From Laetmonice hystrix (Eukaryota): DNA of 64,000 bases. The notes under the pieces were generated by a model that saw only the letters and a program-made list of their open reading frames with translations, was not told the DNA's origin and did no database searches. Where the stretch lies: assembly GCA_965235115.1 (NCBI GenBank), contig OZ249439.1, positions 16,492,001 to 16,556,000 on the forward strand. Reading direction: 5' to 3'. Positions 14,585 to 54,715 of the stretch are shown in pieces; position 1 is the first letter of the stretch; each line of letters opens with the position of its first letter. The position numbers were made by a program, and so were the translations under genes.

Positions 14585-17249
14585 TCAAGGCACATGGGGC
14601 CTTTTCAAGCTGAAGGCAGACAGGAGAGAAGTCGTGAATTCCTTACAGAAGATCAAGTAAAAGAAAGGGTTGAGGAGAGCACTGCTGTAGCTCAACCATT
14701 CCAGCACCATCGTCACCTGTACGGGCATACCCTGGATACAACTTGGGCAGAAAGATATCGTGGTCGATGCAATCACGTAGGGTAAAGATCCCACCAGGAA
14801 TAAGACCGACATGAAGAGTAACAGTCGAGCATTAGCTTTGTGATATTTGATGCGAGTCGACAGCCGATAGCTTTGGCTTTGTTGGACCTGAGCCATGTAG
14901 TTAAAGGTCGAAGTCTGTGCTAGGTTCTCGCGGGCCCTCTTCAAGGTTTCTGTGACGTCAATCAGGGACAAGCCAGGACCGTTTGACTGCGGTCTTTGGC
15001 TGACCCCGGGGCTCTTCGTGGCTCCAGCATTGCCGTTGCTTAGTGGAGTCGCAGGGTTCGCCATATGTACACTGTTGCTGTTACGGGTCTTGTAACGACA
15101 GCTGAGTAGTCTGGGTCGAATGGGGTTGACTTTGGGTGCGGGCTGGTTCGCAGGTAAGCTGAACTTGACGCTTTTGTTGCTGTAGCGTTTGCTGACGTTC
15201 CGCTTGAGAATAGACCGTTGGCCAGCAGTGTTATCGGCGGCACCGAATGAGCTGGTGCGGGAGGTCGGGCTCAGAGTCTCTTCGCTGCTACTGCTCGCCA
15301 ACAGCTCCACCGGCTGCTCCGCCCCAATCAAATCCAGGCCCCCTGGACACACCCGGCCAGTATCGGTCGGAGGGGCCTTCACCTTAATGCATTCTGACAG
15401 AGGATGCTCCTCGGCAGGGTTGAGTTGAAAGGTGGGGTTGTCATGGTCACGGTAGAGCGTTTCCTCAGAGAGCAGTCTAGATGTCATGTCCATGACAACA
15501 GTCAAATCGTCATCTAGAGGTTCATTGAGGGCTTCCTTGCCAAGTTTAGTCTTCACGTGAACCATGCTGACCTGGGGGTCACAGGACAAGGGGGTCTCCT
15601 CAGCAGATTCGGTTAGATCCGTCTGGATGGGGACCCTGTCACTGCTGACTGCCGAACCATCGTGCAGACCGTCTGGGGGACGCTCACTGCCCTGTCCATC
15701 TCCTGAGAGTGTTTGTATGCCCTGGAGGACATCACTGCACACACATTCTCCAAGGGCCTTCGTCCCAACCTCTGTCGTGCTGCCTATGCTATCCGGGAGT
15801 TGGTCTTGATTTCTGCCTTCAGGACTTGCATCGTTTTTCTCATTCCGTTCAGCCTCCTCAGTAGATAGGCGGAGGGAGACATCTTTCGGGTTTACAGGAC
15901 CAGCGTCAATGTTTGAGGTTCCCTGAACATCTGAAATGACAGTTGGTGAGTTGCTGCTGTCCATAGCTGCTGCTGTTTGGAGAGTTTTAGAGGTGGTGCC
16001 GTTGGCCGCATCGGTACAATCGTCACTTGCCACAGAGTTCTCAAAGGTAACAAAACCGTTTGAGGAGACGTCACCAATTAGGTCAGACTGAAGCCTGCAA
16101 ATGATCTCTTTTTGGTGGTTGAGGGTGAAAACAACCCAGACGGAGACAGCAGTCATGAAGAGAAGAGGTAGGAGGTAGTTAGGAACCAGTCCAGCAGCGA
16201 GGTAGATGTAGTCCATGGGAACACCAGAGTAGAAGAGATGGGAAGGTCGGGTGTGGGTGACGACCAGCCCGATATAGGGGACGGAGAGGAGGGCGGGTAT
16301 GATCCAGGCGATCAGTAACTGGCTGGTGATGAAGGACGCCGAGGTGAACCTCGCCATTTTAAGCGGCGTGTGGAGGGTCGGGTGACAGTGGAGAGTGGCC
16401 AGGCTGAGGTGGGTCAGAGTTAGGCAGCAGCTGGCGAGATGGACGCCCTGCCATACGGTCGACAGCCACGGCGGCACCCCAGCGCCACCTACAGCAGAAA
16501 CATGACATCAAACTCAAAACGTCCCAGGATATGGGCGGCACAGTCAGTCAGATAGGTGTATGACCTGTCGACGTCTGCATGCCTCATTCAACAAACCAGC
16601 CACATATAAGTTCTACATTTACCTTTGTTGATTGTTAGTGAATACTGGTCCCAGTTGAGACTAGGGTAAGGTTCTACAGGAAGTCCGTCATTGACTTTTT
16701 AGATCAATAATTTTTAATAGACTAGATCTTACACCTTTGCAAATAAATAAAAAAAGGGAAGATATGTCGGACTGGAGACCTTTTTTTGTAAAAGGCTATT
16801 GACTATACGTGTAATAATTTTGACTCACCTATCAGAACTCGAGCGATTGACATGGGCAGGACAGTGATTGACCGTAAGACGTCGCTAAGTGCCAGGGAGG
16901 CGAGGAGGAAGTAAAACAACAGGTGGAGCCGTGAACTTCGGGCCACCACCGCCAGAACTGTGATGTTACTACTGAAACAGACCGCCGTGATGATCATCAG
17001 GAGTATAACGGGCCAGTCGTGAGCCAGGTTAGGAGACCCTGCTGGTGGGTCGTTCAGGGTAGTCGAATTCATTTCTGAGCCTTCCGTACCCGCCTGACCA
17101 GTATCCCACAAACTTGTGTTGGAATCAGTGGAAACCATTTCCGATTGGACGGTTGTTGTCACATAGAGTGCCAATGGGGCCATGCTGTCATGGGTTGTCG
17201 TCCATAAAGTCGGCCATACAAAAGTTGTCTCTGCTGGAACCACGCTCAT
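14585..17249 (-). CDS. Class A (rhodopsin-like) GPCR with aminergic-type scaffold, atypical/orphan, 774 aa
   Basis: Coding exons 17249-16829 (421 nt, phase 1, donor G|GTGAGT) and 16488-14585 (acceptor TTTCTGCTGTAG; TGA at 14587-14585); intron 340 nt. Seven hydrophobic segments: TM1 SSNITVL, TM2 LASLALSDVL, TM3 STVWQGVHLASCCLTLTHLSLATLHCH, TM4 IAWIIPALLSVP, TM5 YLLPLLFM, TM6 FLVGSLPY, TM7 EWLSYSSALLNPFFY. ECL3 FCPSC; N-terminal NTS/NST sequons. Confidence 0.9.
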
Positions 17250-30600: not shown

Positions 30601-33600
30601 GCAACTAATTAATTTAGACTCCGATGATTTCATTTTTGACCCCAAGAATTTCGTGGTGCGTCCAAAGGAAATCTTTGGAAGCAAGAATATAAGTCCTTAC
30701 TCTTGAAATGATTACTAACAAATGATTTTCACATTGTTTCCAGCTAATGGCAAAGAGACAAAAGAGAAGAAACTGGATGTCAAAGTATCTGTCTCAAGAA
30801 GTGAACAAAAGGATAATCGAACTGAGGTCAAGTCAAGTGTGAAGATGTCCAACAATACAGTTGATATAAAGACAGAGCGTAAGGAGGCAGCTGAACCACG
30901 GTGAGTCAACAGAAGATGGGAAGCCATGAAAATTTGACCTACTGAAACAAGTTAACAAATCGCCCTTCAGCTTTATGGGATAGCAGGCCATGCCATTTGC
31001 TGCTTACAGGTGGCAGTCCTTAGGCTAAATATAAAACTAGTTATAAAATATAACACAAGGTGGTTGAAATTGGCTCTGAACAAGGTCAAACAAATGAAAT
31101 CCTTGCTGAAAGCTTTTTCCTTTTCTTTAATTATCAGACCATCAACAAGCAAGGATCGCGTCCCCTCAAGGAAGAGTCACAGTGTAGAGAAGGAAATCAA
31201 GGATAAGTCCACTGCTGAAAAAGCTGACAAAGAGAAGATTACCATGAAAGAGAAAAAAGAAGACCGGGAAAAGGGTCACAAGGAGAATCGTATACCAAAA
31301 GAAGACAAGGAGAAGCGACGTGAAGAAAAGGAGCGAAAGGAGAAAGATCGACTTGAGAAACAGGTCCGTGAGGAGAAGGAAAGGGAGAAGACCGGCCATC
31401 GTGAGGAGAAGGAGCGTGAAAAGGCAGCATATCGGGAGGAAAAAGAGAGAGAAAAGGCTGCCCTCCGTGAGGTCAAAGAGCGGGAAAAGGCTGCTCAGAG
31501 AGAAGAGAAGGAAAGACTAAAGGAGGAAAAAGCAGCTGCACGAGCTGAAAAGGAGCACAAAAGTCACAAAGAAAAGAAGGATAAAATCAAGGTGAAGGAA
31601 GAGAGAGCTGATATTGACCAAGAGCGAGAGCCTAGCGTAGGCTCTTCCACCAGTCAACACAGCCATCGCCGCAGTGCTGAATCCTCTCCAAAGCATCAGG
31701 ATGAAAAGGGTAGGTGCAAGTTCCTTTAGCTATCAGTATTTAATGCTTTGATACGAACATTGAGTTTCTGATATGAAGTTCCCATAGTGACGAGTCATCA
31801 TCATGGCAATGAATTATAGCTGTATTTCCACTCTATATAATCTTCAGTTGATGAAATGCTAAATAGATGCACTGTGATGATTTTTCAGAAGCGAAGCGTC
31901 GGAAGATTGAGGGTGCAAGTAGTAGTGTAAAGGTTAGTATATGACAGGTGTGCTATGTTTACCTACTTCTGGAGGAAGGCAGAAAGAGTGAGGGATGAGC
32001 AAAGGCCACACGCACGTGTCCTCGCAGCTTCTCCGTCCCACTATGTCATCCCCAGTAGGATGTACACCATCTGTCGACACCCACAGGGCTCGAGGACCTG
32101 GAAGCGACCACCGCATGGCGAGCTGGATGGCACCCAGGAGGCAGCACCCAGAGCACCCAGAGCACCAACTGTGGCAAGACTGCCTCATTTGGGATCACCA
32201 ACGGTCTTGGAAGAGTCTCACGTTCCGTCATATTGAGCCGCATTCAGGATTTACCTGTGTTAATGGCATACAGGTACATCAGAGGGTGGGAGAGGAATCG
32301 GGCAGAGTTGCAAGTTACAAGGAAATGTAGCTCAAGAAAGTTGTTGGATAATATGTATGTCGTGAATTAAGGGAGGACTGAATGTTGAAGCCCTGTTCCA
32401 GCAGAAAATTCCAGTCATTGCCAGGCCTAGTCGGCTACACCCAAGATATCTTACCTGCTACCTGATTGGAGAATCTGCCTACTGTTTGTCTTGGTGCCTT
32501 TTATTGGAGGCAGATGAAGACGTGGCAATAGTGTAATCCGTAGTTCTACCAGAGATGGTTCTCTCCCTTACTCCGAGCAGATTGAGGCAAAATAAAATCT
32601 TAGGATGGTGGAGGATGCCCTTGCTTAGTCAGCTTCTGAGGATGTGCCGTCCCGTCTGCAGGTTCCTTCATAGCTCCGCTAATTAACCATCCCGGCAGGA
32701 ATTGCCAGCTAACCCTTGGTTTCGTAAAGAAAAATAAGGCCCCGACCTCAGCATAACCAGCCACTATTATCTGAAAGACCAAGCTTCGATTTGCCCAATG
32801 GTCAGCAGCTGGTAGAAGTCGCAAAGGCAGAAGTGGTCAAAAGGCCAGAGTATGGGAGGTCCTGACGAGGGAAGAAATGCTCAGCAGTCGGCTTTAGTCC
32901 TTATTCGATGGGTTCCAGCATGACTGCTGACGTCAGCCTACACTGTCACCACCTCACTTTGACACCACTTCCTGGTTTGAAGGTTGCCTCATCAGTCTAC
33001 AGGAGACGTCAGCCACCCCAGTCATTGTGTTCACGGTCCTGCTTGGCAACACAGTTTGAAATCCACAATGGATACGTCCCTCTGCTTGGAAGGAAAATGA
33101 GAGAAATTGAAGTCAGGTGATTGTTGTCCCAGCATTGGGACATCAGTCAGCCCCTCGTGTGTTATGCTTTCTCCAGCCTCTAGTTGTGGCATCTTGATGA
33201 ACTGAGAATGAACTGTCAGGGAGAATTGTCTTTGATTCATAGACACATATCTCTCTCCGTGCAGAAAGCATGATTTTGATCACTGTAGTCATGCCACAGT
33301 ATGATGTTCACGTCACACAATGTTCAACGAGTAATGTGACGTCACGTATGGGCCTCAGTTATTATGATGTCGATGTTCGCTTCCAAAACCAAGAATGACG
33401 TCTCCACTACGCTACCTCCAGCAGACGATGATACTGCTCATCCCAGAGCTAACGTCTACACCCAACGTCTACATCCGCGGTCAGCATGTAACGGACGCCA
33501 CACGGAGAGTTTTACCAATGTTGTTGGCCCAGGCCTGAATAGCGAGGATATCAACCACTAATGATGATTGCCAGGAATTCGGAACAATACTTGAAGGACA

Positions 33601-42054: not shown

Positions 42055-44784
42055 TTAGTGATGGTTCTGATAGTAAAGATGTGGGTTTAAGGTGTAAGCA
42101 CTCGGTAAAGACATCGTTGGTGAAGTATGAGGTTGCTGGTATTGTGTAATCGTCATCGGGGACATTGGATGTTGGGGTGGGGGTGGACTGTGCATAGGAG
42201 GGGGTGGGCTGTGCATTGGTTGGGGCTGAGGCTGGGGGGTTGGACTTTGCATGGGTTGAGGTTGGGCCTGGGGGACTGAGGGGCTCTGCATGGGTTGAGA
42301 CTGGGGTACGGGTAGATTACTTGGGAGTGTGTTTGGTAGGGGTATGTGTGCTGGTTGATAAACCTTCTGGCTCATAGTATGATATGATTGTTGGCGTCTC
42401 TGGAGCAACTGTGGATCAATGCTGCGGTGTGCACTGTTGGCGAGATGTTTTTCCAACTGGGCTGCGTGTTCAGAAGGGGGAACGGATGCATGAGGAGGCA
42501 TACCTAATGGGTGCATCCCATGCTGCGAAGGCTGAGGCTGCAGAGATTGGTTAGAATGTGAGCCAGGTGGAACGTGTGTTGTATGAACATGGCTGTGATG
42601 TGGTCCTTGATGTTGCTGTGGCAAGCTCTCCTCCTGTGATGCCTGCAGCTGCAGCTCCTGGTCTTCTGTTTCTGGCTGCTCAATTTTTTTATCTGGCTGC
42701 TCAATTACTCTTCCTTCATGGTAGCTCCCAGGAGGCAGCACATAATGCTGAGTTGGGGACTTCCACTGCATCTTGTGAACCCCTGTTACATGCCGACGTA
42801 ATATCGAATAGTCATAAAATGAGCTTCCACAAAGTTCACAGGTAAAAGGTTTCTCTCCAGTGTGTATCCGTGCATGTCTCAACAAACTTTGCTTTTGAGT
42901 GAACTTCTTCCCACAAACAGGACAGTCAAAACGTTTGTCTCCAGTGTGTATGTTACGATGGATACGCAAAGAGCTCCTTAATCGGAAAGCTTTCCCACAA
43001 TATTCACAAGTATATCGCTGGGTTGTATCTGTGTGAAGCCTTTCATGTGTTTTCAAGGTGCTCTCATGTCTGAAAGCCTTGTTACATATAGAACATACAT
43101 AAGGCTTACTGTTGGTGTGTATCAACTGATGTTCTGCCAGTGAATGTTTGGTTGTAAAGTTCTTGCCACATTTCTCGCATGGATATGTTGGTCGGTTACC
43201 AAGATGCACTGCATTAATATGGATCTGGAGAACTTGCTTGGCTGCAAACGTCTTGCTGCACTGGCTGCATGGAAAAACTGGTTTCACATAACCTTCCTCA
43301 TGAGTTTTTTCATGTCGCTTCAACACATAAAACTGCTTGTATTTCTTCCCACATATTTTGCATGGATATCTGACTGCACTAGTTTTGTGATCTTTCAGGT
43401 GTCTTGACAGGTCCCTACTGACCGCAAACTTCTTGTTGCAGATTTCACAAGTCAAGGTTTTTTCTTTGTGTCTGCGTAATCGATGTTCCTTTAAGTGTTT
43501 TCTAGAATTTGTTGAATAGTCACATTCATTACACTGATATACATGCCGTCCAGGACGTTTACCAATTCCAGTTTTGACAGCTGAAATGACATTTGGTTCA
43601 ATCCTGAGGTCCACCTCAATATGTTGCCGTCTCATATGATCACGCAGGAATGCTTTCTTATTGCTGGTGAATGGGCACTCAGTACAGATGTATTTTGGTC
43701 CATATGCCACTGCTTTAGGTTCAGCATGAACTGTGTTCATCTTCTCAATCATTTCTTCTATTAGGTTTTCAAGTTTTTTGCTCTGCTCTGTAGTTTTCTC
43801 ATGGTCTTCAGGGGGTTCTTCTATTGGTGCTTTATGTTTTATTCCCAAATAATCTAATATGGCAACCGAGTCTTCATCTTCACAGTTCTCTTGCTGGGAC
43901 AGTTCTGTTGGTGGTGGGTCTATTGATTTTGGTATACTTTCACTTGTTGCATCAGTTTGAGAGACCAGGCCTGAACTCATAATTGCTTCTTTGGCAACAC
44001 ATATCATTACATTGGTATACTGATCGGGTGTATCTCCGGATTTAGCATTGTCTGGCATCTCTGACTCATCTTTAACTTGGTTGGAGCTACTATTGGGGTC
44101 TGAACAAGTGGGTGCCTCGACCTCTGTTATTTCATCTACATTAGCCTTATTATTAGTAGTATCTCTTTTGGCTTCTTTCTGTTCCTCTTCACCCTGTGGG
44201 AGATCCTGGCGAGTGGGATCACAACCCGCGGCCTCAGGTTGCTGCTCTGGCCAGTGTGGGTGGCCATCATCACCGCCACTGACTGGGTCTGCTCCAACAG
44301 CCTCCAGTTCAGGCTGCGGGTCAGAATCACTCCCCGGTTTCACGTATTCTGGCACGACACGCACTTTCCGAGGACGGCCTCTTTTTCTTTTGGGTGGGAG
44401 GGGTTCGGTGTGTAGCGCCTCCGTGGTGGGCGGGGGCGGCCGCCTTTTGGGAGGCCTGCCCCTCGGCCTGGGGCTGGGCAGGGTCGGGGTCACTGGTTGG
44501 GCACCCATCCTCAGGCGAGTCACCCTGGTGTTAGCCGCCTGGTATTCCGCGATCGCATCCTTCTCGATACTTGCTACCTTCGCCAAGATATGGTAAGCAC
44601 GTTTGATTGCATCCCACTCTCCTTTTATTTGCCACTGACTTTCCTTTTTGTAGACGGTGTAGCTGACACCAACCAAAGTTTTAAGGCTGTCAAAAAAAGC
44701 TTCTTTCCATGTTTTCCCCTTGGCTTTCATGCACGACGCCAGTTCAGGGGAGAGGGTGGCAGTAACACTGCTAAAAACAGTCAT
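42055..44784 (-). CDS. C2H2 zinc-finger protein, 909 aa, single coding exon; 2 AT-hooks, 10 fingers, Q/P/H-rich C-terminus
   Basis: Uninterrupted ORF from ATG 44784 to TAA 42057-42055. Ten C-x2-C-x12-H-x3/4-H fingers (YICTEC... to FTCELC...) with TNSKP/TGDKR/TGEKP linkers; RGRP AT-hook cores at 44463-44452 and 44382-44371. Confidence 0.93.
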   Translation of the reverse strand: MTVFSSVTATLSPELASCMKAKGKTWKEAFFDSLKTLVGVSYTVYKKESQWQIKGEWDAIKRAYHILAKVASIEKDAIAEYQAANTRVTRLRMGAQPVTPTLPSPRPRGRPPKRRPPPPTTEALHTEPLPPKRKRGRPRKVRVVPEYVKPGSDSDPQPELEAVGADPVSGGDDGHPHWPEQQPEAAGCDPTRQDLPQGEEEQKEAKRDTTNNKANVDEITEVEAPTCSDPNSSSNQVKDESEMPDNAKSGDTPDQYTNVMICVAKEAIMSSGLVSQTDATSESIPKSIDPPPTELSQQENCEDEDSVAILDYLGIKHKAPIEEPPEDHEKTTEQSKKLENLIEEMIEKMNTVHAEPKAVAYGPKYICTECPFTSNKKAFLRDHMRRQHIEVDLRIEPNVISAVKTGIGKRPGRHVYQCNECDYSTNSRKHLKEHRLRRHKEKTLTCEICNKKFAVSRDLSRHLKDHKTSAVRYPCKICGKKYKQFYVLKRHEKTHEEGYVKPVFPCSQCSKTFAAKQVLQIHINAVHLGNRPTYPCEKCGKNFTTKHSLAEHQLIHTNSKPYVCSICNKAFRHESTLKTHERLHTDTTQRYTCEYCGKAFRLRSSLRIHRNIHTGDKRFDCPVCGKKFTQKQSLLRHARIHTGEKPFTCELCGSSFYDYSILRRHVTGVHKMQWKSPTQHYVLPPGSYHEGRVIEQPDKKIEQPETEDQELQLQASQEESLPQQHQGPHHSHVHTTHVPPGSHSNQSLQPQPSQHGMHPLGMPPHASVPPSEHAAQLEKHLANSAHRSIDPQLLQRRQQSYHTMSQKVYQPAHIPLPNTLPSNLPVPQSQPMQSPSVPQAQPQPMQSPTPQPQPQPMHSPPPPMHSPPPPQHPMSPMTITQYQQPHTSPTMSLPSAYTLNPHLYYQNHH

Positions 44785-51100: not shown

Positions 51101-54100
51101 TTCACGATGCATTTTTCCTTCATAGATATTTTAGATTTGTTATTGTATACATGTAAAAATAGCAGTCAAATATATTTGGTATGAAACATACTGGTAACCA
51201 CCTTGATGTTCACAACAAGGCTATTTAAAGCGTAATGGAGTTATACCTATAGATAAAATCATTCTGTCTTGTCAGGAGTGGCTCCAAGTGGTCTCATGTT
51301 AGTTGTGCCCTCTGGATCCCAGAAGTCAGTATTGGGTGCGCAGAAAAAATGGAGCCAATTACTAAGATATCCCACATACCGGTAAGAGTGCCCAGACATT
51401 TACAAGCTGTAAATGATATCAGGTTTCATATAATTCAAGCCAAGTATAAAAAAAAATCTCGAGTATGTACCACAAATAATGATTTCTTTAAGTATGATTT
51501 TGTTACCCTCAAAATCTAGTTCAATTCCCTTAGGAAAGCTATTGGATGCAGGCGATCGGAGGATGCTTGGTGTTCTGTGTACTTTAATGTTTTTTTTTCT
51601 TATTTTGTACAGTCAAGTAGATGGGCACTGATATGTTCCTTGTGTCGAGAAAGAACAGGGGCATGTATCCAGTGTTCCGTGAAAACCTGCAAGACAGCGT
51701 TCCATGTAACCTGTGCCTTCCAGCATGGGCTTGAAATGAAAACCATTCTTGAAGATGATGAGGAGGAAATTCAGTTAAAGGTTAATTTAAGTTTCTGCTC
51801 TTTTCTTCAAAGATAACCCCTTAAATAGGTAAACAGATTTGACTGGAGGGGATTGACATGAATCTGTATTTAACCATGAGAGATGATATTCATTGGCATT
51901 CTCACGGAATTCTAAGACATTTTTATTCATAACAATCTGAGTATCTTTAGAAAGTTGATGAAAATCTGTTTGAAACAGCAACTAATGAAGTAGAAGGATT
52001 TACAATTATTTACAAATATTTGTTATGGCTGCACTGCAGGCTTATTGCGGAAAGCATACGAAAAAAAGAGCAGAAGCTGATGGAGGGACGCCTCGTAAAG
52101 AAAGCTTCCTCACTTCTGCAGGAACCCCGAAAAAGGAGAGTGAAATGACAGAGGAGGAGAAGACTGAACTCCGCTCTCACAGGTTGGTTCGTGTAGGGTT
52201 TCAAGAGTGTCGGTTTTCTTTTCAATTAATTATATCTTATTTTTTCTATTCTTGATGACGAGGGCTATGTTTTTTAGCTGAGATTACCAGCAACATTAAG
52301 TTAAAAGTGTTTTTAGAAATGTTCCCAATATAAATACTGTTATTCCTATGAATGAAAATGAATTCAAACGTACAGTACATGAATCGCTTCCTCATTAAAT
52401 GGTGCTATATGTTTATATAGGTTGAAAAAGTTGTCGGAAGAATTCTACACTTGTATTAAAATACCACAAGTAGCTGCAGCAACACAAATGACGGAAGAAG
52501 TAGTTGACTATATCTACAATTATTGGCTTCTGAAACGAAAGGTGAAGAGTTTATTTTTGTAATTAGAGTGATGGCCATAAGCGTTTACAAAAATGATATG
52601 AGCAGTGACTCAGAAGTAAATGTTTAGTATTGATAACATACAGTTAGGTCTTGACTTGTTTAGGGAAGGAACGTATCTCTAGTCATTAAAGACCAATAAT
52701 GATTAATGGGAATGAAACTAGATGTTTCAGTCTGGTCTATGATACAAGGCTAAACATGTAACCAGGTTTAAATATGCTGTATTTTTGTTTTCAGTCCCAT
52801 TTCAACAAGCCATTGTTGACACCAAAAACAGAGGAGGCTGATCTTCTATCTAAACAACAGGAGGACAGTTTACTGGCCCGCATGAAGATGTTTGTTCATC
52901 TCAGACAGGACTTAGAGAGGGTATGTTTGTGGGTGCTTCTCAGTCTGGCGTCTCCATCAGGGGCAGCTTCAATCAAAAAGTTACAATGAATTCACCCGTT
53001 TTACTCAGTATTCATTTTTACATCTTTATACATCGTGGGTAATGCTGAATGAGCAAAATATTTAAAAGTATATATATTTCATAATTTGCTTTCTTTGTGC
53101 ACAGGTGCGTAACCTCTGTTATATGGTAACCCGGCGTGAGAAGATGAGACGAACATTGTATCGTATGAAGGAGGACATCTTCCAATCCCAGGCAGAACTT
53201 CTGACTGATGAACGACAACACTTTGGGAAGAGAGAGATGGCAGCCATCCAGGGGGCTCATAAATCAAAAATCGAGGTGTATGATGATTATGACTTTATCC
53301 TCCAGATTTGTGGAGACGCAGTGTTGAGGGGTCCCATTGACCACAATCTGGAATCCATCCGTGTCAAACATCCAGGACGACCACGGCAGGCCTTATCCAG
53401 TGGAAATTTGGATTCAGATTCAGAAGTTGGCAGTCTCCTGAATTATCGCCTCCATAATGATGACGCGTCCCGCAGGTCTGCTAGAGCAAATGCTAACAAG
53501 GCAAGGCATAAACTTCACAGTCGTCAGAATAGGCAAAAACTGGTACATGACAAAGAACAGGTAGATCCAAGAAGAGGTCCAAAGGGAGAACGGACAGGAG
53601 CTGTGAAACGAAGTCGCTCAAGACAGCTTTGGCATCCAGGAAAGCAAAGCTTAAAAGATGGGATTGAAAACCGTCGATCACTTTCAAGGTACCATCGGTT
53701 AAGCGACCAACATGGCCGACATCGCCACCACAGGGGCAGGCTTGAAAATAGTCGCCACAAAAGACTCTCCAGTGGTCAGGACAACGTGACATCATCTTTG
53801 GTAGTGTTGAACCGAGGCAACAAGAAAAGTGACATTAATGGCGTATTACCAGCCAGTAAACTAGTTGTTGGGCAGAGCATTAAAGAAAAAGTCCAGAGTA
53901 GACTACACAGAGGTGGTAACCTACCAGTTAATGGCCTGTCTGACCATACAAAGCAAAAACTTGACAATTTCTTCCAGTCTGTAGAAGATAGTGAGGTGGA
54001 CAATCCCAAACAGGACAGGGATAGTAAGGCCTTCAATCCCATGTTAGACAATGCGCCCCTAATTGACAGAGACTTGGTGAGGCAAGACAGCCGATGTTTT

Positions 54101-54715
54101 AAAGAAGGTATATTCTCTAGTGGTCGTTCCACACCGCAAAAAGACCATGTTGCGTATCGCAACTCTAAAAAGGCCCTAGATGAAGATGTTGACTTGAGAA
54201 ACCAGCAGAGTCCAGTCAGTAGTAAGGCCAGCAGAGACTTAGATCAACGACCTGGTACACCAGAAACAAGGGCCATGAGGCGGAAAATTGAATCTGATAT
54301 AGAGTCAAATTCAAGTGATAGATTGTATGAAAATCTAGATGGTGAAATCAGTATCCGCTCAAGTCGAGAAACGACTCCTGACCGGGATGGATCTTTACGT
54401 AATGTGCGCAAAGACTTGGATTTTGGACGACTGTCTGTCCAAAGACATCTAGATCAACGATTGAAGGCAAACCATCTGGTGGGTGGAGAGGCTCCTGACG
54501 ATCACCCTGCAGCATTGGGTGGAGACACTGACAGTGAATATGCAGATAGTGAAAGTAGTGGCTGTGTGACACGAGCCACACGTCGTTCCAGGACTCTGGC
54601 TGAAAACACGGACACTGTGTCGGTGGACAGTGCCACATCCTCAGGTAGTAAATACAGTACACGGTCAAGGATCAGTGACCAATGGCAGCGAGCACTCGGT
54701 ACTCTTCACAGCTAA
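48200..54715 (+). CDS. JADE1: JADE/PHF17-family (Rhinoceros-like) EPC + double-PHD (PZP) scaffold of the HBO1 acetyltransferase complex
   Basis: Exons 48200-48242, 48475-48495 (probable), 48682-48764, 48907-49064, 49422-49469, 49699-49859, 50065-50123, 50400-50489, 50691-50753, 50904-51022, 51276-51381, 51613-51780, 52040-52182, 52421-52541, 52795-52920, 53105-54715. Signatures: [96 protein letters not shown]. The symbol denotes the family; it may be a single pro-orthologue of JADE1/2/3. Confidence 0.95.

What the first reader, a model, noticed from the sequence alone, without database searches (positions are those of the whole stretch)
14585..17249. Aminergic-type GPCR that has lost the amine-binding Asp, the DRY motif, the toggle Trp and both disulfide cysteines
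Seen: TM3 aligns without gaps to aminergic receptors (W3.28, C3.36, H3.42-L3.43, P3.57), and TM7 keeps W7.40, Y7.43 and NPxxY. However D3.32 is His, D-R-Y is H-C-H, C3.25 is Ser, ECL2 (LVVTHTRPSHLFYSGVPMDY) has no Cys, and CWxP is GSLP. Established: D3.32 anchors the amine, R3.50 and W6.48 are central to G-protein activation, and the C3.25-ECL2 disulfide is near-universal in class A. Inference: paired loss of both Cys in an intact 774-aa ORF suggests functional repurposing (non-amine ligand, G-protein-independent scaffold or heteromer partner) rather than decay.
Basis: partly seen in the sequence, partly recalled or inferred. Interest (0 to 1): 0.7.

Follow-up and report, generated by a model that had tools for sequence, protein, structure and literature searches.

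The report
Orphan receptor with phosphatase docking loop
An intact, conserved invertebrate gene encodes a serotonin-receptor-like membrane protein that has lost the residues for binding amines and switching on G proteins; it keeps a strictly conserved docking site for protein phosphatase 1 in a huge inner loop, so it probably acts as a membrane scaffold, not as a classical receptor.

Summary
A two-exon gene on the minus strand (17249-16829 and 16488-14585, 340-nt GT-AG intron) encodes a 774-aa class A receptor. It has S3.25, H3.32, H-C-H for DRY, G-S-L-P for CWxP, no ECL2 cysteine and also S5.58. It keeps N1.50, D2.50, W3.28, W4.50, P5.50, P6.50, W7.40, Y7.43 and NPxxY.

It is not decaying. 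An orthologue (48% identity) has the same exon structure, omega is about 0.15, and no haplotype carries a stop or frameshift.

The genome is an invertebrate (spiralian-like), not a vertebrate. The gene belongs to an unnamed family of at least 19 sequences. A rooted tree nests this family inside aminergic receptors, next to a 5-HT2-like clade with Tyr at 6.48. The tandem neighbour gene belongs to that clade, and the linkage is conserved in a second species.

Loss of D3.32, R3.50 and W6.48 is old and family-wide. Only the paired cysteine loss is lineage-specific, and it happened twice.

The most conserved part is a motif cassette in the ~415-aa disordered ICL3, including SILK plus RVxF. A complex prediction places these motifs in the two matching PP1 grooves (0.92; best control 0.44). 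The most likely function is a G-protein-independent, PP1-recruiting 7TM scaffold. The same scan noted the SILK/RVxF motif separately on this window.

The parts
16829..17249 (-). Exon 1: start codon, glycosylatable N-terminus (NTS, NST), TM1 (17015-16938, N1.50) and TM2 (16919-16839, D2.50). Ends in phase 1 inside the Gly codon of ..VLIG.
   Evidence: Pfam 7tm_1 E 9.4e-6. The orthologue's exon 1 aligns from its own Met.
16489..16828 (-). Intron of 340 nt, GT-AG, in ECL1. Same position and phase as in the orthologue and in the neighbouring amine-receptor gene.
14585..16488 (-). Exon 2: TM3 to the stop codon, including the giant ICL3.
   Evidence: Pfam 7tm_1 32.8 bits, cut-off 30.5.
16367..16468 (-). 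TM3, carrying S3.25 (16460-16462), W3.28, H3.32 (16439-16441), C3.36 and H-C-H in place of DRY (16382-16390).
16214..16267 (-). ECL2 without cysteine. Gly229 (16223-16225) stands where the orthologue and seven other family members have Cys.
16106..16213 (-). TM5 with P5.50 and S5.58 (Tyr lost; 16142-16144).
14861..16105 (-). ICL3, about 415 aa, predicted disordered. It alternates fast-evolving filler with conserved short motifs.
   Evidence: AF2 pLDDT below 50. dN about 1.0 in the filler against 0.31 in the conserved part. Motif table.
16049..16066 (-). ICL3 motif 1: S-S-N-G-F-V, just after TM5.
15512..15541 (-). ICL3 motif 2: G-K-E-A-L-N-E-P-L-D. The Pro is invariant in the family.
15428..15445 (-). 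ICL3 motif 3: H-D-N-P-T-F. Family consensus is G-hydrophobic-[DE]-N-P-x-[FY], which resembles an LDL-receptor-type sorting or PTB-docking signal. The Asn is invariant.
   Evidence: The functional reading is inference.
15377..15403 (-). ICL3 motif 4: P-L-S-E-C-I-K-V-K. The Leu is invariant.
15161..15217 (-). Bipartite PP1-docking-like module: R-S-I-L-K-R (SILK), then K-S-V-K-F (RVxF) 13 residues later, with basic Ser sites between. I, L, K, V and F are invariant in the family.
   Evidence: Predicted to sit in the PP1 SILK and RVxF pockets.
14861..14899 (-). Conserved helix Y-M-A-Q-V-Q-x-x-Q-x-x-R-L leading into TM6.
14756..14860 (-). TM6 with F6.44 and G-S-L-P (14780-14791) in place of CWxP.
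14612..14722 (-). TM7 and helix 8: E7.39, W7.40, Y7.43 and NPFFY (14657-14671).

Best explanation
SHOWN
- This is a functional, selectively maintained gene for a divergent class A 7TM protein.
- It belongs to an unnamed invertebrate family that arose from within the amine receptors. Its closest relatives are a 5-HT2-like clade with Tyr at 6.48.
- Its tandem neighbour, about 18 kb downstream on the same strand, belongs to that clade.
- Across the family the amine-anchoring Asp3.32, Arg3.50 of DRY and the toggle Trp6.48 are gone.
- The old ligand pocket and the G-protein face are no better conserved than the rest of the helices.
- The strongest conservation lies in an ordered cassette of short motifs in a long disordered third intracellular loop.

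INFERRED
- The protein no longer works as an amine-activated G-protein switch.
- It works as a membrane-anchored scaffold whose ICL3 recruits the catalytic subunit of protein phosphatase 1 through a SILK + RVxF module.
- The basic Ser sites between and beside the two motifs (KRNVS, KRYS, K-S-V-K-F) would let kinases switch the docking off, as in other PP1 regulators.
- A second motif (hydrophobic-x-N-P-x-[FY]) may tie the protein to clathrin adaptors.
- Whether the 7TM core still senses a non-amine ligand that gates this scaffold is open.
- The loss of the C3.25-ECL2 disulfide in this species is a late, secondary relaxation of the extracellular side.
For: Real and constrained:
- The orthologue L007 has the same two exons and intron phase, at 48.5% identity.
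- dN is 0.22-0.31 in the helices and conserved ICL3, against saturated dS of at least 1.4. In TM1-2, omega is about 0.15.
- Reads show 10 synonymous and 12 nonsynonymous polymorphisms (pN/pS 0.38) and no stop or frameshift.

Descent:
- The family profile hits 5-HT1A, 5-HT2A and 5-HT2C at E 3e-24 to 1e-22, and all 60 best solved chains are amine receptors.
- The exhaustive search returns only family members and canonical amine receptors.
- In the rooted tree the family is monophyletic (99/99) and family plus Y6.48 clade scores 100/99. P0018, which has D3.32, DWY, Y6.48 and a partial cassette, is the basal member.
- In its own genome the tandem neighbour is the best non-self match of the family profile.
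- The tandem order is conserved in the second species.
- E7.39 is shared with the Y6.48 clade.

Loss of classical function:
- Position 3.50 is C, S, A, V or W in 13 of 13 members, and 6.48 is never Trp.
- Mean pocket conservation is 1.03 in the family against 4.67 in the sister clade. The G-protein face scores 1.48 against 4.12.

Scaffold:
- 9 of the 11 invariant columns lie in ICL3 motifs, including I-L of SILK and K-V-F of RVxF.
- The cassette keeps a fixed order, with 12-15 residues between the starts of SILK and RVxF.
- The bipartite module occurs in 21 of 29 family sequences, 0 of 94 other amine receptors and 1 of 20,000 shuffles.
- ICL3 is predicted disordered.
- In the predicted complex with an animal PP1 catalytic subunit the score is 0.92 in three runs, against 0.44 for the best of three controls. 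The mark was reached by 51 of 78 solved complexes and 2 of 108 mismatched pairs. Partner pLDDT is about 54 and the runs agree in at least 65% of contacts. SILK contacts PP1 53-59, 116-119 and 166-169. K-S-V-K-F contacts PP1 242-243, 261 and 288-293.
- The motif definitions follow PMC9813921.
Against: - There are no expression data for this gene; no RNA run was available.
- PP1 binding is predicted, not measured. Many PP1-RVxF complexes are solved, so the pass may reflect the model's memory of the motif and not this copy's affinity (caveat stated).
- The SILK-RVxF spacing is shorter than in RRP1B, the solved SILK-containing regulator I read about (about 40 residues, PMC9813921).
- The target keeps D2.50, N1.50, P5.50, F6.44, P6.50 and NPxxY, and the helices are under purifying selection. 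A ligand-driven conformational change, and even unconventional G-protein or arrestin coupling, is therefore not excluded.
- Some class A receptors without a canonical DRY still signal (general knowledge).
- The other ICL3 motifs have no assigned partner.
- The taxonomic range of the family is known only from unnamed environmental and assembly contigs plus one Capitella protein.
Confidence: 0.6

Rival explanations
1. It is still a true ligand-activated receptor for a non-amine ligand. It signals through G proteins or arrestins by an unconventional route, and the ICL3 motifs are only regulatory decoration (desensitisation, trafficking).
For: - The fold-keeping and some activation residues are retained: N1.50, D2.50, W4.50, P5.50, F6.44, P6.50 and NPxxY.
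- E7.39, W7.40 and Y6.51 are conserved in most members.
- The helices are under purifying selection.
Against: - R3.50 is absent in all 13 members where it can be read, 6.48 is never Trp, and Y5.58 is lost in this gene.
- NPxxY is degenerate in several members.
- Pocket positions are less conserved than other helix positions across the family (1.03 against 1.35). Between this gene and its orthologue they are about as conserved as the helices overall (14 of 23 identical).
- The strongest constraint lies in ICL3, not in the helices.
Confidence: 0.22
2. It is an obligate partner (heteromer, chaperone or negative regulator) of the neighbouring canonical Y6.48 amine receptor. It would bring PP1 to that receptor.
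For: - The head-to-tail tandem with the closest paralogue is conserved in two species whose synonymous sites are near saturation.
- PP1 is a known GPCR phosphatase for receptors that lack their own RVxF (PMC3956607).
Against: - Linkage is what an old tandem duplication leaves behind and needs no functional tie.
- There are no co-expression or interaction data.
- In Owenia the fetched flanks of two tandem Y6.48-clade genes held no family member. About 18 kb between them was not read.
Confidence: 0.12
3. It is a decaying or recently dead gene whose open frame persists by chance.
For: - It evolves about 17 times faster at nonsynonymous sites than its neighbour over the same species pair: dN 0.22 against 0.013.
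- Many canonical residues are lost.
- No RNA evidence was available.
Against: - The 2,325-nt CDS is intact with conserved splice sites in two species.
- Omega is well below 1 in the helices and motifs.
- Three read sets show no disabling variant.
- The motif cassette is conserved across a deep family.
Confidence: 0.03

Closest known systems
5-HT2-type and other monoamine receptors (class A, alpha group)
   Same: - Same fold and helix register.
- Shared residues: W3.28, W7.40, Y7.43, P5.50, P6.50 and NPxxY.
- An ECL1 intron that several 5-HT2/D2-like genes of this genome also appear to have.
- The family nests among them in a rooted tree.
   Different: - No D3.32, no DRY arginine, no aromatic toggle at 6.48 and no Y5.58.
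- No disulfide in this species.
- The pocket is not conserved.
- A ~415-aa ICL3 carries a conserved motif cassette that the 94 other amine receptors in the comparison lack.
The unnamed spiralian amine-receptor clade with Tyr6.48 (the neighbour gene; Owenia CAH1777443 and CAH1777446, Schmidtea GCR027, Tubulanus 5-HT2B-like/octopamine-receptor-like)
   Same: - Closest relatives by tree (100/99) and by profile score within the same genome.
- Tandem linkage with this gene.
- Same intron position and phase.
- Shared E7.39.
   Different: - That clade keeps D3.32, DRY and a very strongly conserved pocket (4.67).
- It evolves slowly (dN 0.013).
- It has no ICL3 cassette.
PP1-interacting proteins with SILK and RVxF motifs (for example inhibitor-2, KNL1, RRP1B)
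   Same: - A disordered region carries [GS]-I-L-[KR] and [KR]-x-V-x-F.
- Both motifs are predicted to use the same two PP1 pockets.
   Different: - Here the module sits in the intracellular loop of a 7TM protein.
- The two motifs are only 13 residues apart.
Atypical (non-G-protein-coupling) class A receptors such as the atypical chemokine receptors and C5aR2 (from general knowledge)
   Same: An altered DRY region in an otherwise intact, conserved 7TM protein, which suggests signalling without G proteins.
   Different: - No homology beyond the class A fold.
- Those receptors keep their ligand pocket and act through arrestin or scavenging.
- This family has lost pocket conservation and gained a phosphatase-docking loop.
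GPCRs regulated by PP1 (somatostatin sst2/sst5, PMC3956607; spinophilin-bound D2 and alpha2 receptors, and mGluR C-tails, from memory)
   Same: PP1 is brought close to a 7TM protein.
   Different: - sst2 and sst5 have no canonical RVxF and are thought to need a separate targeting subunit.
- Here the canonical docking module is built into the 7TM protein and is its best-conserved feature.

Membership tests
Class A (rhodopsin-like) GPCR, Pfam PF00001 | Profile match above the curated cut-off and a seven-helix layout. | tested here: met
   Exon 2 scores 32.8 bits against a cut-off of 30.5, and exon 1 matches profile positions 2-44. Seven hydrophobic helices are present. TM3-7 are predicted as helices with pLDDT 70-84.
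Class A (rhodopsin-like) GPCR, Pfam PF00001 | Conserved fold residues N1.50, D2.50, W4.50, P5.50, P6.50 and NPxxY. | tested here: met
   All are present in the target.
Class A (rhodopsin-like) GPCR, Pfam PF00001 | Activation switches: R3.50 of DRY, W6.48 of CWxP and Y5.58. | tested here: not met
   The target has H-C-H, G-S-L-P and S5.58.
Class A (rhodopsin-like) GPCR, Pfam PF00001 | The C3.25-ECL2 disulfide. | tested here: not met
   The target has S3.25 and no Cys in ECL2. The orthologue keeps both.
Monoamine (aminergic) receptors | Descent: placement inside the aminergic clade. | tested here: met
   In the rooted tree, aminergic receptors plus the family score 100/100, and the family is nested beside the Y6.48 clade at 100/99. 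The top 60 solved-structure hits of the family profile are all amine receptors.
Monoamine (aminergic) receptors | D3.32 as counter-ion for the amine. | tested here: not met
   The target has His. Other members have Q, L, T or E; only the basal P0018 keeps Asp.
Monoamine (aminergic) receptors | Aromatic and polar pocket residues: W6.48, F6.51/F6.52, S5.42/S5.46, W7.40 and Y7.43. | tested here: inconclusive
   W7.40 and Y7.43 are kept and 6.51 is Tyr. However 6.48 is Ser, 6.52 is Val, 5.42 is Gly and 5.46 is Asn.
Monoamine (aminergic) receptors | Activation by a biogenic amine. | not testable with these tools
   This needs ligand assays.
PP1-interacting proteins (SILK + RVxF type) | An RVxF motif fitting [KR]-x-V-x-[FW] in a disordered region, conserved in relatives. 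| tested here: met
   K-S-V-K-F has K, V and F invariant in the family alignment. The region has pLDDT below 50.
PP1-interacting proteins (SILK + RVxF type) | A SILK motif [GS]-[IV]-L-[KR]. | tested here: met
   S-I-L-K has I and L invariant. The definition is from PMC9813921.
PP1-interacting proteins (SILK + RVxF type) | Occupation of the RVxF and SILK pockets of PP1. | tested here: met
   This is a prediction only. The score is 0.92 against a best control of 0.44, and the contacts lie at PP1 242-243/261/288-293 and 53-59/116-119/166-169.
PP1-interacting proteins (SILK + RVxF type) | Physical binding to PP1 and an effect on its activity or targeting. | not testable with these tools
   This needs biochemistry.
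Atypical (decoy or scavenger) class A receptors | No G-protein coupling, with arrestin- or endocytosis-based action. | not testable with these tools
   Only the altered DRY and an N-P-x-F motif are seen.
Atypical (decoy or scavenger) class A receptors | Homology to chemokine or complement receptors. | tested here: not met
   All of the nearest relatives are amine receptors.

The most novel reading that the evidence does not exclude
The family is a 7TM regulatory subunit of protein phosphatase 1. It would be an amine-receptor chassis converted into a membrane-anchored, possibly ligand- or kinase-gated PP1 holoenzyme, kept in tandem with the canonical receptor it came from. That would be a GPCR-derived signalling route that outputs dephosphorylation instead of G-protein activation.
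Probability: 0.3. Interest if true: 0.85.

Novelty: new variant of a known kind. Interest (0 to 1): 0.62.

Why it matters
Receptors that have lost the DRY arginine are usually treated as oddities or dead ends. This case is different in three ways:
- A whole, old invertebrate family descended from serotonin-type receptors shows the loss of amine-binding and G-protein switches.
- That loss goes together with the gain and strict conservation of a phosphatase-docking cassette.
- The canonical sister gene sits next door as a natural control.

If the PP1 docking is real, this is a clear natural example of a 7TM protein rewired from G-protein output to phosphatase targeting. It also makes the repurposing question directly testable with a short peptide, two point mutants and a coupling panel.

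Tried and rejected
- Vertebrate origin. I first assumed a fish or other vertebrate gene and tried to match human orphan receptors from memory. I rejected this because the genome's own 5-HT1-like and D1-like genes are only distant from human ones and the named relatives are annelid, nemertean and planarian proteins.
- Word-indexed protein searches. All three returned only the orthologue P0001. The exhaustive representative search was needed to find the family.
- Cluster look-ups. They gave almost no names.
- ESM Atlas. It gave only generic GPCR labels.
- Expression. No RNA run holds the locus. The three runs are DNA of one sample and served only as a sequence and polymorphism check.
- AF2 on the exon-2 protein. 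Overall confidence was low (pTM 0.38) because TM1-2 are missing and ICL3 is disordered. I did not use it for a fold search.
- The full spliced protein. It could not be handed to the structure tools by reference.
- PP1 from the same genome. The gene is split into short exons. I took an uninterrupted animal-type PP1 from a metagenome/metatranscriptome contig that is identical over the 78-aa exon.
- Owenia synteny. No family member lies in the fetched flanks of the two tandem Y6.48-clade genes, but about 18 kb between them was not read.
- Literature. Seven full-text searches found no description of this family or of a GPCR with a built-in SILK/RVxF loop.
- Pseudogene reading. Rejected.
- The shared ECL1 intron as specific evidence for sisterhood. 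Only weakly informative, because several other amine-receptor genes of this genome also start their main exon at about that profile position.
Full report
**1. What is in the sequence**

The ORF listing shows two minus-strand open frames, 16803-17249 and 14585-16477. Reading the DNA shows a GTGAGT donor after 16829 and a CTGTAG acceptor before 16488. Joining 17249-16829 to 16488-14585 gives a 2,325-nt CDS of 774 aa with one terminal stop.

Both exons hit Pfam 7tm_1. The best solved relatives are 5-HT1A and 5-HT2C, and TM3 aligns to them without gaps.

- S3.25, W3.28, H3.32, C3.36, H3.42-L3.43, P3.57
- H-C-H at 3.49-3.51
- G-S-L-P at 6.47-6.50
- W7.40, Y7.43 and NPFFY
- an ECL2 with no Cys

It also adds S5.58.

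Contigs from three DNA runs of one sample cover the critical codons unchanged. Across the CDS they show 10 synonymous and 12 nonsynonymous differences and no indel. A 7-nt indel lies upstream of the ATG.

**2. The host is an invertebrate**

The genome is 627 Mb in 35 pieces. Its 5-HT1-like and D1-like genes match human receptors only at E 2e-80 and 3e-72, with several subtypes close behind. This is not what vertebrate orthologues would give.

The named relatives of neighbouring clades come from Capitella, Owenia, Schmidtea and Tubulanus. Earlier notes on this genome also read it as annelid or spiralian. I dropped my first assumption of a fish gene.

**3. Orthologue and selection**

One contig (locus L007) encodes an orthologue at 48.5% identity. 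It has the same start, the same phase-1 intron after ..L-I-G, and a 795-aa product. It keeps H-C-H and G-S-L-P and has Q3.32. It also retains C3.25, an ECL2 Cys (Y-S-C-V-P-M-D-Y, against Y-S-G-V-P-M-D-Y here) and Y5.58.

Synonymous sites are near saturation (pS 0.63-0.73). dN differs by region:

| Region | dN |
|---|---|
| Helices | 0.27 |
| Conserved ICL3 blocks | 0.31 |
| ICL3 filler | about 1.0 |

Over the same pair of species, TM1-2 of the neighbouring canonical receptor has dN 0.013 and dS 0.93. TM1-2 of the orphan has dN 0.22 and dS 1.46. The orphan therefore evolves about 17 times faster but is still under purifying selection (omega about 0.15). The pseudogene reading fails.

**4. A family, not a one-off**

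The exhaustive HMMER search of 1.84 billion representatives gave 127 hits. The top ones share the giant ICL3 and align through it.

The tree places 19 rows in this family, and two further fragments carry the cassette. They share an ordered cassette:
- [ST]-S-N-G-[FD]-V
- G-K-E-x-L-N-x-P-L
- hydrophobic-[DE]-N-P-x-[FY]
- P-L-S-[ED]-S-I-[KR]
- S-R-x-S-S
- R-R-S-I-L-[KR]-R
- K-[ST]-V-K-F
- R-K-P-T-G (this block is replaced in the target's own subfamily)
- Y-M-A-x-V-Q-x-x-Q-x-x-R-L, leading into TM6

In a 13-sequence alignment the only invariant columns are eleven. Nine lie in ICL3: the Pro of motif 2, the Asn of motif 3, the Leu of motif 4, I-L of SILK, K-V-F of RVxF, and one Arg. The other two are P6.50 and W7.40.

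Position 3.50 is C, S, A, V or W in all 13 readable members, with Cys in 9. Position 6.48 is never Trp. D3.32 survives only in P0018.

The cysteine pair covaries perfectly. Seven members have both, two (this gene and P0004) have neither, and none has only one. The other losses are ancient.

**5. Where the family comes from**

A profile of the family hits only amine receptors among the best 60 solved chains (5-HT1A 2.9e-24, 5-HT2A 1.1e-23, 5-HT2C 1.3e-22). Nearly all non-family hits of the exhaustive search carry C3.25, W3.28, D3.32, DRY, an aromatic 6.48, W7.40 and NPxxY; the few exceptions are long-branch or fragmentary rows.

I built a careful tree of 76 sequences and 201 helix columns. It was rooted on 12 non-aminergic class A genes from the same genome. 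The main supports are:

| Grouping | Support |
|---|---|
| Aminergic receptors plus family | 100/100 |
| Family monophyletic | 99/99 |
| Family plus a clade of canonical receptors with Tyr at 6.48 | 100/99 |

P0018 (D3.32, D-W-Y, Y6.48, partial cassette) is the first branch of the family. The next relatives have 5-HT2A/2C as their nearest solved structures.

Four independent lines agree with this placement:
- The gene 18 kb downstream on the same strand belongs to the Y6.48 clade. Its exon 1 is at C4:16488289-16488531 and its main exon is around C4:16473725-16474873.
- That gene is the best non-self match of the family profile in the whole genome, at 5.8e-22 and 2.7e-18, against 1.4e-15 for the next gene.
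- It has the intron at the same codon and phase. Several other amine-receptor genes here seem to share an ECL1 intron, so this point is weak.
- E7.39, which is variable in amine receptors generally, is fixed in the Y6.48 clade and kept in most family members.

Walking along the orthologue's contig found the neighbour's orthologue about 46 kb downstream on the same strand. Over the 77 aligned residues of exon 1 it is 91% identical, with the same ..A-L-I-G|GTAAGT donor. The tandem is therefore conserved.

The target is the only family member in its genome.

**6. What has been kept and what has been let go**

I compared mean pairwise BLOSUM scores by position class:

| Position class | Sister Y6.48 clade | Orphan family |
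|---|---|---|
| 23 pocket positions | 4.67 | 1.03 |
| G-protein face | 4.12 | 1.48 |
| Other helix positions | 2.78 | 1.35 |

In the sister clade the pocket is the best-conserved part. In the family the pocket and the G-protein face have lost their special constraint. Between this gene and its orthologue, 14 of 23 pocket positions are identical, about the same as the helices overall (59%).

AF2 on the exon-2 protein predicts confident helices for TM3-7 (pLDDT 70-84) and disorder across ICL3. Disorder is the expected setting for short linear motifs.

**7. The phosphatase dock**

R-S-I-L-K-R and K-S-V-K-F fit the SILK and RVxF definitions used for PP1 regulators (PMC9813921). Three counts show the pairing is not chance:
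- 21 of 29 family sequences have both motifs in order within 5-20 residues.
- 0 of 94 other amine receptors in the hit list do.
- 1 of 20,000 shuffles of this ICL3 does.

The start-to-start spacing is 12-15 residues throughout the family.

The genome's own PP1 gene is split into short exons. I therefore fetched an uninterrupted animal-type PP1 catalytic subunit from a metagenome contig. It is identical to the genome's PP1 over a 78-aa exon.

The complex test used PP1 residues 1-300 with ICL3 residues 545-604. It scored 0.92 in three runs, and the best of three controls scored 0.44. The mark was reached by 51 of 78 solved complexes and 2 of 108 mismatched pairs. Partner pLDDT was about 54, and the runs agree in at least 65% of contacts.

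The interface matches the known pockets. SILK residues sit on PP1 53-59, 116-119 and 166-169. K-S-V-K-F-S-L sits on PP1 242-243, 261 and 288-293.

The tool's own caveat applies. PP1-RVxF complexes are well represented among solved structures, so the pass shows likeness to a true docking module, not measured binding.

Basic Ser sites between and within the motifs would allow kinase control. This is inference by analogy with other PP1 regulators. The hydrophobic-x-N-P-x-[FY] motif resembles LDL-receptor-type sorting signals. This is inference from general knowledge and was not tested.

**8. Verdict**

The gene is a maintained member of an uncharacterised invertebrate family that arose from 5-HT2-like amine receptors. 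The family gave up amine binding and the classical G-protein switches. Its most constrained part is now an intracellular motif cassette with a PP1 docking module.

I hold it most likely to be a G-protein-independent, PP1-recruiting 7TM scaffold (0.6). The rivals are a still-signalling non-amine receptor (0.22), a partner of the neighbouring receptor (0.12) and decay (0.03).

I found no paper describing the family. The only named member is a Capitella 'hypothetical protein'.

I tested it here.

Noticed in passing
G000:C4:16473725-16488531 (just before window position 1; loci L005, L012-L014): The tandem neighbour is a two-exon amine-receptor gene with a 13.6-kb intron. It belongs to an apparently uncharacterised spiralian clade with Tyr in place of the toggle Trp6.48. 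The clade has a very strongly conserved pocket (D3.32, V3.33, T3.36, F5.38, F6.51, F6.52, Y6.55, E7.39, Y7.43). Its ligand is unknown, and automatic names elsewhere waver between '5-HT2B-like' and 'octopamine receptor-like'.
   Followed up: partly
window 42055-44784 (-): A single 909-aa open frame encodes a multi-C2H2 zinc-finger protein (zf-C2H2 E 3e-40).
   Followed up: partly
window 53105-54715 (+) and 31010-31729 (+): Open frames of 536 aa and 239 aa have no Pfam match. I did not check whether they are genes.
   Followed up: partly
window 17266: A 7-nt deletion polymorphism lies in the leader 17 nt upstream of the start codon, in one of three read sets. The locus is polymorphic (22 substitutions in 2.3 kb of CDS), which suggests a very heterozygous or pooled sample.
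   Followed up: partly
window 16382-16390 and TM3 generally: Cys at 3.50 is the commonest family residue (9 of 13), flanked by His or Asp. TM3/ICL2 of this gene is unusually rich in His and Cys (H3.32, C3.36, C3.37, H3.42, H-C-H, H3.55). A metal site or a lipidated Cys at the cytoplasmic end of TM3 is conceivable. I did not test this.
   Followed up: no
G000:C10:22046765-22049095 (L049): Another amine-receptor-like gene has an 842-aa open frame and a long ICL3. The family profile matches only its helices, and it has no motif cassette.
   Followed up: no
L051 and L052 (Owenia fusiformis CAIIXF020000002.1, 20.33-20.44 Mb): Two Y6.48-clade receptor genes (P0020, with a long ICL3, and P0024) lie in tandem on the same strand about 28 kb apart. 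Tandem duplication therefore seems typical of this clade.
   Followed up: partly
P0009 (JGI contig of 2,669 nt): A full-length 780-aa family member is encoded without interruption across the otherwise conserved ECL1 intron position. The contig may be a transcript, which would be indirect evidence that the family is expressed, or it may be an intron-less copy.
   Followed up: no
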